From Macrostomum lignano (taxonomy: Eukaryota): 64,000 nt of DNA. The stretch's first letter is position 1; each line of letters opens with the position of its first letter. The translations under genes and the position numbers were made by a program. The DNA lies in NCBI GenBank assembly GCA_002269645.1, contig NIVC01003733.1, positions 1-64,000 of the forward strand, given 5' to 3'. Of the stretch, positions 44,990 to 63,299 are shown one piece after another. The notes below the pieces were generated by a model, which ran no database searches, was not told the DNA's origin, and saw only the letters and a list, made by a program, of their open reading frames with translations.

Positions 44990-54797
<9,808 letters not shown>

Positions 54798-55119: not shown

Positions 55120-57185
55120 GAAAGGGGGAGGGGAAGGGAGAGATGAAAAGGAAGAGAAGAAGGGGAGAGAGGAAGGGAGAGATAAAAAGGAAGAAAAGAA
55201 GGGGGGAGAGGAAGGGAGAGAGGAAGGGAGATAAGAAGGGGAGAGAGGAAGGGAGAGAGGAAGGGAAATAAGAAGGGAGAGAGGAAGGGAAATAAGAAGG
55301 GAGAGAGGAAGGGAGAGACGAAGGGAGAGAGGTAGGGAGAGAGGAAGGGAGAGAGGAAGGGAGAGAGGAAGGGAGAGAGGAAGGGAGATAAGAAGGGGAG
55401 AGAGGAAGGGAGAGAGGAAGGGAGAGAGGAAGGGAGATAAGAAGGGAAGAGAGGAAGGGAGAGAGGAAGGGAGAGAAGAAGGGGAGAGAGGAAGGGAGAG
55501 AGGAAGGGAGATAAGAAGGGGAGAGAGGAAGGGAGAGAGGAAGGGAGAGAGGAAGGGAGAGAGAGAAGGGGTGAGAGAAGGGGGAGAGGAAGGAAGAGAG
55601 AAGAATGGGAGAGAGAAGGGGTGAGAGAAGGGGTGAGAGGAAGGGAGAGAGAAGGGGAGAGAGGAAGGGAGAGAGAAGGGGAGAGAGGAAGGGAGAGAGG
55701 AAGGGAGAGAGGAAGGGAGAGAGAGAAGGGGTGAGAGAAGGGGGAGAGGAAGGAAGAGAGAAGAATGAGAGAGAGAAGGGGTGAGAGAAGGGGTGAGAGG
55801 AAGGGAGAGAGAAGGGGAGAGAGGAAGGGAGAGAAAAGGGGAAAAGAAGGAGGACAAAGGGGAGAGAGAATTAATAGAGAAGGTGAGATGGGTTTGTCAA
55901 TAAATGTATTTGCTTTATTGAATAGTAGGAAAGTAGAAAAACTTTAGCATTTTTTTCATCCAGGCATCATATCCACCGCTTCTATCAAACTGCAGAATCA
56001 GCTGTTTAACCTAAATTAGAAAATCTTAAACAGATTTAAAACAAGATTGATGATTTTGCGAAGTTTCTTCACGAATATTTCGCCTGTTGTAATTTGAATA
56101 AACTTTCCCTGGCTTAGCTCGGCTGTGGTAGAACCACACAGCAGCGGTTTGGGTATCTTAGATGCAGCACCACAGCACCAGTCGCTTTCGCACATTCATA
56201 AGTGTTATGTTAATATGCAAATGCTTAACCCTGTCACCCTGTCACCCCGTCACTGTCACCCTGTCACTCTGTCACTCTGTCACTCTGTCACCCTGTCACT
56301 CTGTCACTCTGTCACCCTGTCCCTCTGTCACCCTGTCACTCTATCACCCTGTCACCCTGTCACCCTGTCACCCTGTCACTCTGTCACTCTGTCCCTCTGT
56401 CCCCCTGTCACCCTGTCACCCTGTCACTCTATCACCCTGTCACTCTGTCCCTCTGTCACCCTGTCCCTCTGTCACACTGTCACTCTGTCACCCTGTCATT
56501 ATTTCTCCATGTATGTTTTGCATATGATGAGAAAGATATTTATTTAATGCTCGTATTTACAAAAAAATCATAGCCAAACAAGGATAGCGCTTGACGCAGG
56601 TGTCTAACAGAATTTAACAGCAAACTTGTGTTCCATTTCGTATTTATTCGACACCTGTGCTCAGCAGTTTTCAGCTGATGGCAATTTTTTATAAACCATG
56701 GATAATTTCAAGAAATAGGAATCGTGTTTATAAGAGATTGATAGAGAGTTTAAGAGATTGATAGAGTGTTTGAGAGATTGATAGAGAGTTTGAGAGATTG
56801 ATAGAGAGTTTGAGAGATTGATAGAGAGTTTGAGAGATTGATAGAGAGTTTGAGAGATTGATAGAGAGTTTGAGAGATTGATAGAGAGTTCGAGAGATTG
56901 ATAGAGAGTTTGAGAGATTGATAGAGAGTTCGAGAGATTTAAAGAGAGTTTGAGAGATTGATAGAGAGTTTGAGAGATTGATAGAGAGTTTGAGAGATTG
57001 ATAGAGAGTTCGAGAGATTGATAGAGAGTTCGAGAGATTGATAGAGAGTTTGAGAGATTGATAGAGAGTTCGAGAGATTGATAGAGAGTTTGAGAGATTG
57101 ATAGAGAGTTCGAGAGATTTAAAGAGAGTGTGAGATATTGATAGAGAGTTTGAGAGATTGATAGAGTTTGAGAGATTGATAGAGC
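55120..57185. repeat. GA-rich array at 55120-55860, (CTGTCACC/T)n at 56228-56498, and 20-bp (GAGAGATTGATAGAGAGTTT)n at 56730-57185
   Basis: Direct tandem periodicity. Confidence 0.93.
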
Positions 57186-57621
57186 GTTATACCATACAAA
57201 ATCACCAGCAATCCATGGCCAGCAACCAAACTAATTTTAATGTTGTTAAGGTAAAATTATAAATTTTTCGCTTCATTTTCGCTCGTCTTCACTTCGCTCA
57301 ACTCGCTCCGCTCATCCTCGTTTCATTTCGGTAAAAATGTATAATTTTACCTTAACAACATCAAAATTACCTTTTGTTTCTGAAATTTCGCTCTCGTCGT
57401 TCGCTTGTGGTTTGCTGGTGATTTTGTATGCTTCCAATACTTCCAACACTTCCAACACTTCTAACACTTCCAAACAATTCCAACACTTCCAACACTTCAA
57501 ACACTTCTAATACTTCCAACACAACCAACACCAACTAACTGATAATAAACCTCACCCGCCCGTGCCGCAGGCACGCGGACGAAGTCCGACCGCCCCGAAG
57601 GGGCTTGGGGCACAGAAAAGC

Positions 57622-57929
57622 ATGATTTTTCTGTTAGTAAAAATAAACCGAGTTTACAACTTTTCAGTAAGTGATACTTCGAAACTGTTGCTAAAAATGC
57701 TGAGATAATAAAACAGCATATATTGAATGGAATAATCGATGAGGTTTTTTTAAAATACAACAACGGCGAGGAACTAAAACTTTATCCACTAGAGTTAGAC
57801 GGTTTATATGATTTAGAACAGGAGGGAGAGCTAATTTTTCAACTTGGTGATTATTTAAATTCAGACGATTGGGAGGTTCGTTCAACGGATTCTGAGTCAA
57901 CAAATAGTTCGTTTGAAACTAGTGAATGA
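57622..57929 (+). pseudogene. Decayed AT-rich small ORF 1 (MIFLLVKINRVYNFSVSD / YFETVAKNAEIIKQHILNGIIDEVFLKYNNGEELKLYPLELDG...), frameshift near 57672
   Basis: Intronless and AT-rich. Shares motifs with the neighbouring ORF 2 (FSVSD/FSITE, IIDEVF/ILDEVY, YPLE). Confidence 0.5.
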
Positions 57930-58003
57930 AGTGAATAGAGAATGAAAGTGAAATTTTTATGTAAAAAAATGGAATTAGGCAGCAGACCCCACTTTTCAAT
58001 AAC

Positions 58004-59253
58004 CAGTGTTGGGCACTTCCGTTACCGAGTAACTTGTAAATGGTAACGCAAGTTACTTTTTCGTAAAGCGTTCCTTACGCAAGTTACTTTCCTATTTTGG
58101 TAACGGAGTAACGGTAAGTTACTCAAATTTCGGAAGTCCGTTACAGTTACTTTGCAACAATCGCAATATTTAAATTTAAAACTGATATGCTTAGCTATTA
58201 CTCCAGTTGTCACATTTTTAGCATTTTTCATTCCTAAATTCAAAACTAAGTGAATAATATCATACGGTATTACGCTGTAATTAATAAAGAAATACTTGAA
58301 ACATGTTTTTACTTTGTTATTTTCGGTAAAATATTTTTGCTTTTCGTTTTTAAGTTAATAAAAATATTTTGTTTAGTTCTTAGAAACAAACAACCAAAGA
58401 AAGAAATTCATCTGTAGTCTCCACAAATCCACTCAGTGATCGACGTAGCCAGGAATTTTAATTGGGGGGGGGCGGGTTGGCCTGGCTGGCCATGCCTCAT
58501 GCCATTGCCACTTTTAGCGCCGCAGGCACTCATTTAAGCGCCGCAAGCACTCATTTAAGCGCCGCAGGCACTCATTTAAGCGCCGCAGGCACTCAATCGC
58601 CTCATGGTTTTTGGTACCCGCCACGCCCAACCCCACCCCCCCAGGTGGGGTGTCTTGCAGGTGGGGTGAAGTTGCCGCCCCAACGATTGTTAAGGCGGCC
58701 TCCCTGGCTACACCACTAAAGTCCACTGGCACTGCACTGCACTGCACAATAATTTAATATTATGATAAATTGAAAATAAATAAAAAGACTAGTAAAGCAG
58801 ACTATAGAGTGGAGTAAAGCCAGGTACTTATTACGAGCGATGTATTATCAAGGACAACTGAAGTTACGTTAAGTTGTCCTTGTGTATTATAACTTATAAT
58901 GTTATTAAAAATTAAATTGCGTTTTGCATTTAACGTTTCTGACCTTCAGCTTCTCTTCTTTTACGGAAAGGGCCTAAAGTGATTAAAATTTAATACAGTT
59001 ACTGAAATTAATATTGTTTTATTCTTCCTCCTGGCTTTCGCGATCATTTGTGCTGTTCCAGCGCATTTGCAATGTTAAAAAAGCAGAAAATTTTGTTAAT
59101 AACATAGGTAACGGAAGTAAGTAACGGAAGTAACTTAAAAGTTACCGGGTTTTTGTATAAAGTTACTAGGCTAACGTAAGTTACTTTTTAAAAAGTGGTA
59201 ACTTAAGTTACAGTAACGCAAGTTACTTTTTTTGAGTAACTTGCCCAACACTG
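58004..59253. mobile_element. Non-autonomous hAT-superfamily DNA transposon
   Basis: 12-bp TIR CAGTGTTGGGCA/TGCCCAACACTG, perfect 8-bp TSD TCAATAAC (57996-58003 and 59254-59261), clustered subterminal GTAAC/GTTAC motifs, no transposase. Confidence 0.88.
58434..58718. mobile_element. MITE nested inside the hAT element
   Basis: Imperfect TIRs cagtgatcgacgtagccagg / cctggctacaccacta, flanks aaatccact/aagtccact (TSD-like, one mismatch), internal 21-bp repeat in about 4 copies. Confidence 0.65.
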
Positions 59254-59526
59254 TCAATAACTGAATCAACTCAAACAATATTTAATGCACTCGATTCAAT
59301 AAAAAAACTTATAAAGGATGAAATACTCGATGAAGTATATATATACAACCAAATAAAAAGATATATCCACTTGAAATTGGAGAATTAGATTATATTTGGG
59401 ATAAGGGGGAAGAAAGTCTTCTTCTAGCACAATGTTTAAACTGTTAAAAATTATAACTAAAAATCACCCCGATGAATTACTATTCAGTGACAAAAACAAA
59501 TTTATTGCGAAAAATATAAGTAAAAA

Positions 59527-59694
59527 ATGAACTTAAATTATTCCTACATTGGCAAAGTGCCAATTAAAGATTTTCAAGATAATGTTAGTTTGATAGCAGT
59601 TGAACAAGTTACAATAATATTTTTAGTTCTAGTATTAATAATAATATTGTTTTTATTTGTTATAATTTTTTTATTACCTTGTTGCCTTAAGTAA
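59527..59694 (+). CDS. 55-aa ORF with a predicted C-terminal transmembrane helix (MNLNYSYIGKVPIKDFQDNVSLIAVEQVTIIFLVLVLIIILFLFVIIFLLPCCLK)
   Basis: The ATG overlaps the TGA of an upstream frame (aaaATGA). About 24 hydrophobic residues in a row. AT-rich DNA can produce such ORFs by chance. Confidence 0.4.
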   Translation: MNLNYSYIGKVPIKDFQDNVSLIAVEQVTIIFLVLVLIIILFLFVIIFLLPCCLK

Positions 59695-59730
59695 TTGATT
59701 CTTATAAAACGATCCTAATATTTCTTCAAG

Positions 59731-60088
59731 TCCTATATACTAAAAATGGTCTGTCTGTGTCTATCTATCTATCTATCTATCTATCTATGTGATCGATTAG
59801 AGAAAAAATGGCTTAACCGATTTTCATGAGACTTGCACTGTTCGATCAGAAATTTTCCCGTGACGGTACATGCATCGTGGCTAAGAAATTGCTCGATGCT
59901 AAAGGCATTTCCTATATACTAAAAATGGTCTGTCTGTGTCTATCTATCTATCTATCTATCTATCTATGTGATCGATTAGAGAAAAAATGGCTTAACCGAT
60001 TTTCATGAGACTTGCACTGTTCGATCAGAAATTTTCCCGTGACGGTACATGCATCGTGGCTAAGAAATTGCTCGATGCTAAAGGCATT
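59731..60088 (+). mobile_element. Tandemly duplicated 179-bp Helitron-like (DINE/HINE-type) 5' head
   Basis: TC start (tcctatatactaaaaatg), internal (TCTA)n, then ggcttaaccgattttcatgagacttg. The second copy starts at 59910. Confidence 0.6.
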
Positions 60089-60423
60089 AAATATTCGAAA
60101 AACATGCTCTTTGCAAAGGTCAAGCAAACTTTTCAACTTGAAATGCATTGTAAGAATGCTAGAGAAAAAATTGACTGGTTGATTCTGATACTGAAATAGA
60201 TTGCATCATAACTGAATTGTAACTCCAACTTGAATTGCGTCACAGTATTGAAAATGCAGTGTGGAAGCGTAGCACCAGACTTGATTTAGATTGTGTAACC
60301 ATATTGTCAACTTTAATTGAGACTGATACTGACTTGCCTGGGAAATTGATTATGTCATAACTGCTTCGTGAGTGAGTGTTGAATTATATAAGTGCTACAA
60401 TTTCACTTATAAATTCGATAAGA

Positions 60424-60485
60424 TCTAGCCTAGAAGTTAACAGACTGGACTGCTAATGCAGCGACCTGGGTTCGAATCTTAGTAG
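60424..60485 (+). pseudogene. tRNA-Ser(GCT)-like remnant or SINE head
   Basis: A-box-like TAGCCTAGAAG, GGACTGCTAATGCA resembling the Ser-GCT anticodon arm, B box GGTTCGAATC. No acceptor stem or long variable arm. Confidence 0.45.
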
Positions 60486-60537: not shown

Positions 60538-63250
60538 AAGGCGTCATGTAAAAAATCATAGAATAGTCATGCAAAAAATCATAGAAGCGTCATGTAAACA
60601 ATCATAGAAGCGTCATGTAAAAAATCATAGAAGCGTCATGTAAACAATCATAGAAGCGTCATGTAAAAAATCATAGAAGCGTCATGTAAAAAATCATAGA
60701 AGCGTCATGTAAACAATCATTGAAGCGTCATGTAAAAATCATTGAAGCGTCATGTAAAAATCATGGAAGCGTCATAAAAAATCATAGAAGCGTCAAGTAA
60801 AAAATCATAGAAGCGTCATGTAAACAATCATAGAAGCGTCACGTAAAAAATCATAGAAGCGTGATGTAAAAAATCATAGAAGCGTCATGTAAACAATCAT
60901 AGAAGTGTCATGTAAAATCATAGATGCGTCATGTAAACAATCATAGAAGCGTCATGTAAAAAATCATAGAAGCGTCATGTAAAAAATCATAGAAGCGTCA
61001 TGTAAACAATCATTGAAGCGTCATGTAAAAATCATTGAAGCGTCATAAAAAATCATAGAAGCGTCATGTAAAAAATCATAGAAGCGTCATGTAAACAATC
61101 ATAGAAGTGTCATGTAAAAAATCGTAGAAGCGTCATGAAAAAATCATAGAAGCGTCATGTAAACAATCATAGAAGTGTCATGTAAAATCATAGATGCGTC
61201 ATGTAAACAATCATAGAAGCGTCATGTAAAAATCATAGAAGCGTCATGTAAAAAATCATAGAAGCGTCATGTAAACAATCATTGAAGCGTCATGTAAACA
61301 ATCATAGAAGCGTCATAAAAAATCATAGAAGCGTCATGTAAAAAATCATAGAAGCGTCATGTAAACAATCATAGAAGCGTCATGTAAAAAATCGTAGAAG
61401 CGTCATGAAAAAATCATAGAAGCGTCATGTAAACAATCATAGAAGCGTCATGTAAAAAATCATAGAAGCGTCATGTAAAAAATCATAGAAGCGTAATGTA
61501 AACAATCATAGACGTGTCATGTAAAAATCATAGAAGCGTCATGTAAAAATCATAGAAGCGTCATGTAAACAATCATAGAAGCGTCATGTAAAAATCATAG
61601 AAGCGTCATGTAAACAATCATTGAAGCGTCATGTAAAAATCATTTAAGCGTCATGTAAAAATCATAGAAGCGTCATGTAAACAATCATAGAAGCGTAATG
61701 TAAAAGCAAAGAAGCGTCATGTAAAGATCATAGAAGCGTCATGTAAAAAAATCATAGAAGCGTCATGTAAAAAATCATAGAAGCGTCATTTAAAAAATCA
61801 TAGAAGCGTCATGTAAAAATCATGGAAGCGTCATGAAAAAATCATAGAAGCGTAATGTAAAAAATCATAGAAGCGTCATGTAAAAAATCATAGAAGCGTC
61901 ATGTAAAAAATCATAGAAGCGTGATGTAAAAAATCATAGAAGCGTCATGTAAACAATCATAGAAGTGTCATGTAAAATCATAGATGCGTCATGTAAACAA
62001 TCATAGAAGCGTCATGTAAAAAATCATAGAAGCGTCATGTAAAAAATCATAGAAGCGTCATGTAAACAATCATTGAAGCGTCATGTAAAAATCATTGAAG
62101 CGTCATAAAAAATCATAGAAGCGTCATGTAAAAAATCATAGAAGCGTGATGTAAAAAATCATAGAAGCGTCATGTAAACAATCATAGAAGTGTCATGTAA
62201 AATCATAGATGCGTCATGTAAACAATCATAGAAGCGTCATGTAAAAAATCATAGAAGCGTCATGTAAAAAATCATAGAAGCGTCATGTAAACAATCATTG
62301 AAGCGTCATGTAAAAATCATTGAAGCGTCATAAAAAATCATAGAAGCGTCATGTAAAAAATCATAGAAGCGTCATGTAAACAATCATAGAAGTGTCATGT
62401 AAAAAATCGTAGAAGCGTCATGAAAAAATCATAGAAGCGTCATGTAAACAATCATAGAAGCGTCATGTAAAAAATCATAGAAGCGTCATGTAAAAAATCA
62501 TAGAAGCGTCATGTAAACAATCATAGAAGTGTCATGTAAAAATCATAGAAGCGTCATGTAAAAATCATAGAAGCGTCATGTAAACAATCATTGAAGCGTC
62601 ATGTAAAAATCATAGAAGCGTCATGTAAACAATCATTGAAGCGTCATGTAAAAATCATTTAAGCGTCATGTAAAAATCATAGAAGCGTCATGTAAACAAT
62701 CATAGAAGCGTAATGTAAAAGCAAAGAAGCGTCATGTAAAGATCATAGAAGCGTCATGTAAAAAAATCATAGAAGCGTCATGTAAAAAATCATAGAAGCG
62801 TCATGTAAAAAATCATAGAAGCGTCATGTAAAAATCATGGAAGCGTCATGAAAAAATCATAGAAGCGTAATGTAAAAAATCATAGAAGCGTCAAGTAAAA
62901 ATCATAGAAGCGTCAAGTAAAAAATCATAGAAGCGTCATGTAAAAAATCATAGAAGCGTCATGAAAAAATCATTAAAGCGTCATGTAAAAATCATGAAAG
63001 CGTCATGTAAAAGGCATAGAAGCGTCATGAAAAAATCATAGAAGCGTCAAGTAAAAAATCATAGAAGCGTCAAGTAAAAATCATTAAAGCGTCATGTAAA
63101 AATCATAGAAGCGTCATGTAAAAATCATAGAAGCGTCATGTAAAAAATCATAGAAGCGTCATGTAAAAATCATGGAAGCGTCATGAAAAAATCATAGAAG
63201 CGTCATTTAAAAAATAAGGAAGCATCATGGTAGAATAAAAGAAGCGTCAT
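60538..63250. repeat. ~23-bp satellite, 2.7 kb (AAAAAATCATAGAAGCGTCATGT), with repeated variant blocks
   Basis: Direct tandem periodicity. Confidence 0.97.
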
Positions 63251-63299
63251 GTCAGACATGAAGGGTTCATGTAAAAATTAAATGCAGCTATAATGCTGT

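What the first reader, a model, noticed from the sequence alone, without database searches (positions are those of the whole stretch)
57622..59694. Compact AT-rich cluster of paralogous intronless ORFs: candidate endogenised viral or mobile-element fossil
Seen: removing the hAT element and one TSD copy rejoins an ORF from the ATG at 57942 into 59262 in frame. It aligns by eye with the ORF just upstream (57622-57929): FSVSD/FSITE, TVAKNAEIIKQHILNGIIDEVFL/TIFNALDSIKKLIKDEILDEVYI, KLYPLELDGL/KIYPLEIGEL. Each copy carries one frameshift. The ORFs are co-oriented and 12 bp apart, and a third 55-aa TM-helix ORF starts on an ATGA stop/start overlap. Base composition is opposite to the GC-rich host exons. 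Inference: tandem small paralogs, tight packing and AT richness are typical of DNA-virus or Polinton-like genomes, so this may be an undescribed endogenous viral element. I do not recognise the protein family.
Basis: partly seen in the sequence, partly recalled or inferred. Interest (0 to 1): 0.75.

Follow-up and report, generated by a model that had tools for sequence, protein, structure and literature searches.

The report
Decayed scrap of a Polinton-like virus
The AT-rich ORF cluster is a dead fragment of about 0.85 kb from the end of a Polinton/Maverick (adintovirus-like) DNA virus element that once integrated into this animal genome; such fossils are common, but its two small gene families are essentially undescribed.

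Summary
The two co-oriented ORF copies are true paralogues: DNA local alignment z = 8.8 against dinucleotide shuffles. A hAT-type non-autonomous transposon sits inside copy B. The 55-aa membrane ORF starts on an ATGA overlap. ORF length alone is not beyond chance, so the case rests on outside homologues.

An exhaustive search of 1.8 billion proteins found one real relative, a 100-aa protein (E 1e-11). Its 1.2-kb contig has the same gene order as the window: small acidic protein, then a 56-aa membrane protein, then a convergent, overlapping retroviral-type integrase. The window also keeps the last 15 integrase codons (14 of 15 identical), then breaks off.

A 13-kb metagenome contig has a 62%-identical integrase and the same small genes. 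It also carries a protein-primed DNA polymerase B, an A32-like ATPase and a parvovirus-type PLA2 domain. That gene set marks Polinton/Maverick/adintovirus elements. Related AT-rich islands are integrated in an animal genome contig.

The finding is therefore the accessory-gene end of such an element. Both copies of the acidic protein gene are broken, the membrane ORF is intact and the integrase is almost wholly lost. It is a new member of a known kind, of modest interest.

The parts
57622..59730 (.). Whole surviving relic of the Polinton/Maverick-like element. About 0.85 kb is element DNA; the rest is one nested host transposon.
   Evidence: Extent of the tblastn matches to the genes of L001. 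G+C is 24-39%, like the relatives L001 (27%) and L002 (24%). No other Polinton gene remnant occurs anywhere in the 64-kb window.
57622..57929 (+). Copy A of the small acidic protein gene ('p100' family). Pseudogene, broken by 1 frameshift, with no internal stop in its longest stretch of 84 codons.
   Evidence: phmmer against 1.84 billion proteins: P0001, E 1.1e-11, 43% identity. tblastn of P0001 on the window: E 7e-19. The N-terminal match lies in another frame, z 4.4. Identity to the L001 gene by codon position is 0.57/0.69/0.46, p = 0.034.
57942..59530 (+). Copy B of the same gene. Pseudogene, broken by 1 transposon insertion (a non-autonomous hAT-type element of about 1.25 kb with 12-bp TIRs and an 8-bp TSD) and at least 1 frameshift, possibly 2. 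Its acidic tail is no longer recognisable.
   Evidence: Collinear similarity to copy A: DNA z 8.8, protein pieces z 4.0 and 4.6. It aligns with P0001 and P0027 over the conserved K-h-Y-P-L-E core. TIRs and TSD.
59527..59694 (+). Intact 55-aa single-pass membrane protein ORF ('TM56' family). Its start overlaps the preceding ORF's stop (ATGA), and its 3' end overlaps the integrase 3' end on the other strand by 21 nt.
   Evidence: tblastn of the L001 56-aa ORF: E 9.5e-10, 44% identity, same length and same C-terminal C-C-L-K end. Alignment with the L001, L005 and L002 members. The family is under purifying selection outside the window: dN/dS 0.24 for L001 against L005. Identity by codon position is 0.56/0.78/0.44.
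59674..59727 (-). Last 17 codons plus the stop of a retroviral-type (rve) integrase gene. The rest of the gene is deleted or replaced.
   Evidence: 14 of 15 residues are identical to the C-terminus of the L001 integrase (tblastn E 5e-4), 75% to L002 and 67% to L004. Homologues of that integrase carry Pfam rve and Chromo domains.
59731..60088 (.). Neighbour: a 179-bp unit repeated twice at 100% identity, each copy containing (TCTA)7. It marks where the integrase homology stops.
   Evidence: Tandem Repeats Finder and self-blastn.
57536..57621 (.). Neighbour: a GC-rich piece of about 85 bp directly left of copy A, with three consecutive mini-hairpins. It has no homology to the relatives and marks the left limit of the relic.
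   Evidence: DNA fold. No counterpart of the L001 upstream Cys-rich ORF in the window. No other copy in the window.

Best explanation
The cluster is a non-functional germline fossil of one end of a Polinton/Maverick-type (adintovirus-like) double-stranded DNA virus element.

**What was there (inferred from relatives).** In the parent element, a retroviral-type integrase gene ran toward a short 'accessory region'. That region held a small single-pass membrane protein gene and small acidic protein genes, two tandem paralogues in this lineage. These genes were transcribed convergently with the integrase, and the two 3' ends overlapped.

**What happened after integration (shown in the sequence).** The rest of the element was lost, including polymerase, ATPase, capsid genes and nearly all of the integrase. 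Both acidic-protein copies were broken. A host hAT-type transposon landed in copy B. Satellites and microsatellites now flank the scrap.

**Function in the living element (inferred).**
- The acidic protein has a helix, beta-hairpin, helix core with a conserved K-L-Y-P-L-E...L...G-x-L-I motif and a disordered acidic Ser/Thr-rich tail. In one relative it is fused to three CXXC pairs. It is most likely a host-interaction or regulatory accessory protein of the kind called 'Oncoid' in adintoviruses.
- The 55/56-aa protein has an N-terminal N-x-S/T sequon, one transmembrane helix and a C-terminal Cys cluster. It is most likely a small glycosylated or acylated membrane (viroporin-like) protein.

The relic itself does nothing now, unless the intact membrane ORF is transcribed.
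For: - **The family is real and rare.** One true hit among 1.84 billion representatives (P0001, E 1e-11). A profile search of 5.8 billion proteins adds only P0027.
- **Synteny with L001**: Cys-rich ORF, p100, TM56, then a convergent, overlapping integrase. The window matches p100 (E 7e-19), TM56 (E 9.5e-10) and the integrase tail (14 of 15 residues) in the same order and orientation.
- **L005** repeats the overlap between TM56 and the integrase.
- **L002** is a 13-kb contig at 24% G+C.
  - Its integrase is 62% identical to that of L001.
  - The convergent, overlapping 190-aa ORF (P0027) has an N-terminus homologous to p100 (pairwise E 7e-7 to both P0001 and copy A).
  - It also has a 50-aa TM ORF, a weak Pox_A32-like ATPase match, PolB PF03175 (E 1.7e-20) and PLA2 PF08398 (E 3.5e-8).
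- **PLA2 next to the integrase** recurs in L004 and L010. PLA2X is a hallmark accessory gene of Alpha adintoviruses (PMC8502044).
- **L010** shows a related AT-rich island integrated beside a 7tm_1 GPCR gene in a 462-kb contig.
- **Coding signal.** dN/dS is 0.24 for TM56. Identity by codon position runs 2nd > 1st > 3rd for copy A and for TM55 against L001.
- **Long residence in a genome.** A nested transposon plus frameshifts.
Against: - The window itself holds no polymerase, capsid, ATPase or protease remnant and no terminal inverted repeat. The class assignment therefore rests on homology and synteny with only three or four short outside contigs of unknown host.
- The contig with PolB (L002) shares just 31-36% identity in the acidic protein, and it has the membrane and acidic genes in the opposite order.
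- No major capsid protein or adenain-type protease was identified in the 12 kb of L002 that I could read.
- The functional readings are weak.
  - No LXCXE motif is present.
  - The CR1-like motif occurs in only 2 of 4 members.
  - CK2 sites are not enriched beyond composition.
  - Both AlphaFold models are of low confidence, with pLDDT 49 and 34.
- ORF lengths in the window are within chance.
Confidence: 0.85

Rival explanations
1. The scrap comes from another integrase-bearing element, such as a Ty3/gypsy chromovirus LTR retrotransposon or a Ginger-type DNA transposon, and not from a Polinton/Maverick-like virus.
For: Only the integrase tail survives in the window. Homologous integrases carry rve plus chromodomain, an architecture that chromoviruses share. 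L010 has a Ty3-like RT and integrase a few kb away.
Against: The closest long relative (L002) has PolB PF03175, an A32-like ATPase and PLA2 within 5 kb of the integrase, with no RT. In L010 the RT element lies outside the AT-rich island, on the other strand, and has its own distinct integrase. L003 also links this integrase type to a PolB fragment.
Confidence: 0.06
2. The membrane ORF, and perhaps the locus as a whole, has been co-opted by the host and is a functioning host gene of viral origin, not just debris.
For: The 55-aa ORF is intact with the same start, length and end as its relatives, while its neighbours are broken.
Against: An open stretch of 55 codons is within chance for this sequence (p = 0.32). 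There is no evidence of a promoter, of transcription or of conservation in other species. The locus sits among satellites about 3 kb upstream of a class-C GPCR gene.
Confidence: 0.05
3. There is no gene at all: the locus is non-coding AT-rich DNA with a local tandem duplication and chance ORFs.
For: ORF lengths are within chance. The DNA-level A/B similarity is statistically stronger than the protein-level similarity.
Against: Independent homologues exist elsewhere with intact ORFs, the same gene order and an adjacent integrase. There are signs of purifying selection.
Confidence: 0.02

Closest known systems
Polintons / Mavericks, including the proposed family Adintoviridae (Starrett et al. 2021, PMC8502044; Barreat & Katzourakis 2021, PMC8097293)
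   Same: Relatives of the window's genes sit beside a retroviral-type integrase, a protein-primed PolB, an A32/FtsK-like ATPase and a parvovirus-type PLA2 domain, the PLA2X hallmark of Alpha adintoviruses. The genes are intronless and tightly packed, with accessory ORFs in a region flanking the core modules. Copies are integrated and mostly degraded in animal genomes.
   Different: The window keeps none of the defining core genes except 17 integrase codons. No TIRs or 6-bp TSD are visible. No capsid or protease gene has yet been seen in the closest relatives. PLA2 lies directly upstream of the integrase, partly in the same ORF in L002. The p100 and TM56 families are not among the named adintovirus genes that I could check.
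Adintovirus 'Oncoid' accessory ORFs (PMC8502044, section 3.2)
   Same: p100 is a small accessory protein. P0001 and copy A contain a motif that fits the paper's CR1 pattern (DEN)(LIMV)xx(LM)(FY) at the same aligned position. It has an acidic Ser/Thr tail with (ST)xx(DE) sites. P0027 has three CXXC pairs, and L001 has a Cys-rich ORF immediately upstream.
   Different: No LXCXE occurs in any member. The CR1-like pattern is absent from P0027 and copy B. The CK2 sites are no more frequent than composition predicts. No sequence comparison with actual Oncoid proteins was possible.
hAT-superfamily non-autonomous (MITE-like) transposons (for the element nested in copy B only)
   Same: It has an 8-bp target-site duplication, short perfect TIRs and repeated subterminal short motifs.
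   Different: It has no transposase ORF. It carries its own GC-rich nested insert. No second copy occurs in the window.
Small single-pass viral membrane proteins (viroporin-like) (own knowledge, analogy only)
   Same: Length of 50-56 aa, a short N-terminal ectodomain with an N-x-S/T sequon, one hydrophobic helix and juxtamembrane cysteines.
   Different: There is no sequence or structural homology to any named family. The best Pfam matches have E > 0.4.

Membership tests
Polinton/Maverick/adintovirus-like elements | [quoted passage not shown] | tested here: not met
   Absent from the whole 64-kb window (tblastn with the L002 PolB). Present in the relative L002 (PF03175, E 1.7e-20) and fragmentary in L003.
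Polinton/Maverick/adintovirus-like elements | Retroviral-type (rve) integrase | tested here: inconclusive
   The window keeps only the last 17 codons, 14 of 15 identical to L001. The catalytic core is gone. Homologues carry rve and Chromo domains.
Polinton/Maverick/adintovirus-like elements | FtsK/A32-type packaging ATPase | tested here: not met
   None in the window. L002 has a Walker-A protein with a sub-threshold Pox_A32 match (E 2.3e-4, 21.2 bits against a cut-off of 22.8).
Polinton/Maverick/adintovirus-like elements | [quoted passage not shown] | tested here: inconclusive
   None in the window. Pfam did not recognise any in the 12 kb of L002. That contig is incomplete at both ends, and Pfam lacks good models for these capsid proteins.
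Polinton/Maverick/adintovirus-like elements | Terminal inverted repeats and a 6-bp target-site duplication | not testable with these tools
   Both ends of the original element are lost or replaced in the window. The relatives' contigs do not reach their termini.
Alpha adintovirus accessory set | PLA2X (parvovirus VP1-type phospholipase A2 domain) | tested here: not met
   None in the window. Present next to the integrase in L002, L004 and L010 (PF08398).
Adintovirus 'Oncoid' proteins | LXCXE Rb-binding motif | tested here: not met
   Absent from P0001, P0027 and both window copies as they stand.
Adintovirus 'Oncoid' proteins | CR1-like motif, CK2 acceptor sites and paired CXXC | tested here: inconclusive
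   The CR1 pattern occurs in P0001 and copy A only (chance 5-8% each). CK2 sites are not enriched. Three CXXC pairs occur in P0027 (p = 0.001), and L001 has a separate Cys-rich ORF.
LTR retrotransposon (Ty3/chromovirus) | Reverse transcriptase/RNase H adjacent to the integrase, flanked by LTRs | tested here: not met
   There is no RT in L002, or in the AT-rich island of L010. No direct repeats flank the window relic.
hAT superfamily (nested transposon) | 8-bp target-site duplication and short TIRs | tested here: met
   Perfect 12-bp inverted termini and an 8-bp direct duplication.
hAT superfamily (nested transposon) | hAT transposase gene | tested here: not met
   No ORF longer than 85 aa lies inside it, so it is non-autonomous.

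The most novel reading that the evidence does not exclude
The p100 and TM56 genes may define a so far undescribed, very AT-rich lineage of adintovirus-like (Polinton-class) viruses that is still circulating. This would fit the intact copies seen in one sequencing run and two metagenomes. Its integrase-proximal accessory region would encode an E1A/E7-style, linear-motif-plus-zinc host-manipulating protein that has duplicated in tandem, and a small viroporin-like membrane protein. The window would then record a past infection of this host's germline by that lineage.
Probability: 0.2. Interest if true: 0.55.

Novelty: new member of a known kind. Interest (0 to 1): 0.3.

Why it matters
Degraded Polinton/Maverick/adintovirus insertions are already known to be widespread in animal genomes, so the existence of this fossil is not surprising. 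Three things have some value.

- **Method.** A scrap of 0.85 kb with no hallmark gene could still be assigned to its class. The assignment came through two tiny lineage-specific genes whose only relatives among billions of proteins sit beside the hallmark genes.
- **New families.** The two families (a small acidic protein and a 55/56-aa membrane protein) are unannotated. One is under purifying selection. They mark a sparsely sampled lineage in which a PLA2 domain directly precedes the integrase.
- **Host annotation.** These ORFs are not host genes, and the AT-rich island upstream of the class-C GPCR gene is viral and repeat debris.

Tried and rejected
**Searches that found nothing or too little**
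- Word-indexed protein search with the longest open stretch of copy A: no candidates.
- IMG/VR scans with copy A, the p100 alignment, the TM alignment, the L001 integrase and the L002 PolB: no confirmed relatives.
- JGI metagenome contigs with the p100 alignment: none. With the integrase: only relatives at 36-42% identity.
- Pfam on the window peptides and on P0001: nothing above noise. The Spt20_SEP match at E 0.003 is below its cut-off. The Orf78/ac78 and LITAF matches to the TM ORF at E > 0.4 are hydrophobic noise.
- PDB sequence search with the p100 profile: nothing.
- Rfam and ARAGORN on the region: nothing relevant.
- AlphaFold on the p100 alignments: pLDDT 49 and 34. I therefore ran no fold search, because matches to such models would be meaningless.
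- Host identification by exact-ORF look-up failed. The sample accessions were not found in the literature. The adintovirus paper's supplementary sequences are not held.

**Readings considered and rejected**
- A nuclear copy of mitochondrial DNA: the acidic hydrophilic protein does not fit.
- A nimavirus or other large-DNA-virus insertion: no supporting hit.
- Assembly contamination: the nested transposon and the frameshifts argue for long residence in a genome.
Full report
**Setting**

The window is animal-type nuclear DNA, unusually rich in micro- and minisatellites. It has GC-rich exons of an ankyrin-repeat gene (minus strand, about 5.9-9.3 kb). It also has a class-C GPCR gene (minus strand, about 46.3-54.8 kb) with ANF_receptor, NCD3G and 7tm_3 domains. 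The finding lies about 3 kb upstream of the GPCR gene's first exon. On its left are a 20-bp satellite, a foldback unit and a 9-bp microsatellite. On its right are a duplicated 179-bp unit and a 2.7-kb 23-bp satellite. I could not identify the host species.

**Checking the observation**

The layout is as described.
- Copy A is at 57622-57929.
- A second ATG lies 12 bp downstream, at 57942.
- A 55-aa hydrophobic ORF at 59527-59694 has a start that overlaps the previous stop as ATGA.
- Copy B is interrupted by an element with perfect 12-bp inverted termini and an 8-bp direct duplication. It contains no ORF longer than 85 aa, so it is a non-autonomous hAT-type transposon.
- Coordinate arithmetic agrees that the frame is continuous across the transposon. 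I did not build the joined sequence.

The A/B similarity is real.
- The DNA local alignment scored 27, against 12.2 +/- 1.7 in 500 dinucleotide shuffles (z 8.8).
- Two collinear peptide pieces each reached z 4.0-4.6.

ORF length is not evidence. Open stretches of 84 and 56 codons occur in 9% and 32% of shuffles of the same DNA. From the window alone, a non-coding tandem duplication could not be excluded.

**Outside homologues**

The word-indexed search found nothing. The exhaustive phmmer search of 1.84 billion cluster representatives returned one true relative, P0001: 100 aa, E 1.1e-11, 43% identity. A second hit, to a 1485-aa repeat protein, is compositional noise.

P0001 is encoded on L001, a 1,202-bp Logan contig from run SRR23592405. 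The gene order on L001 is:
- a 47-aa Cys-rich ORF;
- the 100-aa acidic protein, with an ATGA overlap to the previous ORF;
- a 56-aa membrane ORF, 16 nt further on, that ends P-C-S-C-C-L-K;
- on the other strand, overlapping the membrane ORF's end by 18 nt, the C-terminal 163 residues of an integrase.

The window reproduces this arrangement.
- P0001 matches copy A at E 7e-19.
- The 56-aa ORF matches the window's 55-aa ORF at E 9.5e-10, with the same length and the same C-C-L-K end.
- The last 15 integrase residues match the minus strand at 59683-59727 with 14 of 15 identical. This again overlaps the membrane ORF's 3' end, here by 21 nt.
- P0001's N-terminal motif matches copy A in a different frame from the rest (z 4.4). 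This confirms one frameshift in copy A.

**What kind of element**

The L001 integrase fragment has 24 homologues, several with Pfam rve and Chromo domains. A full-length relative matches foamy-virus integrase cores and chromodomains in the PDB.

The closest one on a long contig (P0004, 62% identity) lies on L002, a 13-kb metagenome contig at 24% G+C. L002 carries:
- an ORF with a parvovirus-type PLA2 domain (PF08398, E 3.5e-8) that runs into the N-terminal part of the rve core;
- the C-terminal integrase part, so the integrase is read in two ORFs there;
- a convergent, overlapping 190-aa ORF (P0027). Its first 70 residues are homologous to p100 (pairwise E 7e-7 to both P0001 and copy A). Its middle is acidic and its C-terminus has three CXXC pairs;
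- a 50-aa membrane ORF that aligns with the TM family;
- a Walker-A ATPase with a sub-threshold Pox_A32 match;
- a protein-primed PolB (PF03175, E 1.7e-20);
- no reverse transcriptase.

The PLA2-integrase pair recurs in L004 and L010. L010 is a 462-kb contig with a 7tm_1 GPCR gene. On it, an AT-rich island of about 7.5 kb holds a VLTF3-like gene, PLA2 and the integrase, and it stops abruptly at the integrase end. It is an integrated, decayed copy in an animal-type genome. L003 links the same integrase type to PolB fragments.

Integrase, protein-primed PolB, packaging ATPase and PLA2X together form the signature of Polinton/Maverick elements and of Alpha adintoviruses in particular (PMC8502044). 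Vertebrate Mavericks are described as having accessory regions with diverse ORFs flanking the core modules. Most of their copies are mutational fossils (PMC8097293).

**Anatomy and state of the relic**

Element-derived DNA runs from 57622 to about 59730. About 0.85 kb of this is element sequence; the rest is the nested transposon.

| Gene | State |
|---|---|
| p100 copy A | 1 frameshift, no internal stop in its 84-codon stretch |
| p100 copy B | 1 transposon insertion, at least 1 frameshift (possibly 2), acidic tail unrecognisable |
| TM55 | intact |
| Integrase | all but the last 17 codons deleted or replaced |

- No other Polinton gene remnant exists anywhere in the 64 kb.
- The low G+C of the scrap (24-39%) matches its relatives (24-30%) rather than the host.
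- Copies A and B are only about 35% identical as protein. Copy A is still 43% identical to P0001, and the integrase tail is nearly unchanged. I infer that the tandem duplication arose in the living element lineage and not after integration. L001 and L002 each have a single copy.

**Are these real genes?**

Yes, in the parent lineage.
- L001 and L005 carry 56-aa ORFs that differ at 44% of synonymous sites but only 14% of non-synonymous sites (dN/dS 0.24).
- Identity by codon position runs 2nd > 1st > 3rd for copy A against the L001 gene (0.57/0.69/0.46, p = 0.034) and for TM55 against TM56 (0.56/0.78/0.44).
- The same trend for A against B is not significant (p = 0.13).

**Likely function (inferred, low confidence)**

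*The p100 family.*
- Both AlphaFold runs predict a helix, a beta-hairpin containing the invariant K-x-Y-P-L, a second helix and a disordered acidic Ser/Thr tail. Confidence is low, with pLDDT 49 and 34.
- P0001 and copy A have, at the same position, a motif that fits the CR1 pattern quoted by Starrett et al.
- P0027 adds three CXXC pairs (p = 0.001). L001 has a Cys-rich ORF immediately upstream.
- No member has LXCXE, and the CK2-type sites are not enriched.
- The best reading is therefore a linear-motif host-interaction protein of the 'Oncoid' sort. This is a lead, not a membership.

*The TM family.*
- It has an invariant Asn at residue 4 within an N-x-S/T sequon, one hydrophobic helix and a C-terminal Cys cluster.
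- This suggests a small glycosylated and acylated membrane protein, functionally like a viroporin or an entry/egress accessory protein.

**Verdict**

The locus is an endogenised fossil of a Polinton-like DNA virus element. The element class is well known and such fossils are common, so this is a new member of a known kind. The modest novelty is the pair of unannotated small gene families. They have only two and three outside members respectively among billions of proteins, and they mark a sparsely sampled, PLA2-integrase lineage.

After one search showed the element to be virus-like, I built no joined, repaired, consensus or ancestral sequence. All searches used unbroken stretches as they stand. 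Breaks are counted here, not located. Outputs and notebook entry 1 from before that point contain the bounds of the nested transposon, because the finding itself pointed to them.

Noticed in passing
window 57536-57621: A GC-rich stretch of about 85 bp directly left of copy A folds into three consecutive mini-hairpins with 5-6-bp stems and 3-nt loops (GCA, GAA, GAA). The z-score against shuffles is only -1.6 and the window holds no other copy. Its origin is unknown; it could be a scrap of another repeat.
   Followed up: partly
window 57189-57430: A foldback or MITE-like unit whose two ends are long inverted copies of each other. It lies between a 20-bp satellite (56733-57188, about 23 copies) and a 9-bp microsatellite (57431-57531).
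   Followed up: no
window 59731-60088: A 179-bp unit is present twice in tandem at 100% identity, and each copy contains (TCTA)7. It starts exactly where the integrase homology ends. It is either a very recent duplication or an assembly artefact.
   Followed up: partly
window 60420-60480: A sequence like the 3' half of a tRNA (T-arm-like) followed by an A/T-rich tail, possibly a SINE remnant. ARAGORN and Rfam do not call it.
   Followed up: partly
window 60541-63252: A 23-bp satellite of about 120 copies at 89% identity. The window as a whole carries many long micro- and minisatellite arrays, for example (TCTA)148 at 53675-54266 and a block of about 6.7 kb of strongly G-skewed repeats at 34-40.7 kb.
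   Followed up: no
window, inside the transposon nested in copy B: The hAT-type element itself carries a GC-rich insert of roughly 285 bp. The insert has four 21-bp tandem repeats and G/C homopolymer runs, and it is bounded by short inverted repeats. This makes a second level of nesting.
   Followed up: no
L002 740-1990: In this metagenome relative, the parvovirus-type PLA2 domain and the N-terminal part of the integrase core lie in one ORF. The integrase as a whole is read in two ORFs. PLA2 directly upstream of the integrase recurs in L004 and L010, so a PLA2-integrase unit may be typical of this lineage.
   Followed up: partly
L010 3000-10550: An AT-rich island (26-37% G+C) in a 462-kb animal-type contig, beside a 7tm_1 GPCR gene. 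It holds a Pox_VLTF3-like gene, PLA2 and the integrase, and it ends sharply at the integrase stop. A separate Ty3-like retroelement lies 4.5 kb further on.
   Followed up: partly
L005 1-535: The first 535 bp of this 1.2-kb metagenome scaffold encode a 172-aa multi-pass membrane protein that looks unrelated to the element. The next ORF starts within the integrase, with no upstream integrase sequence. This may be an integration junction or a chimeric assembly.
   Followed up: no
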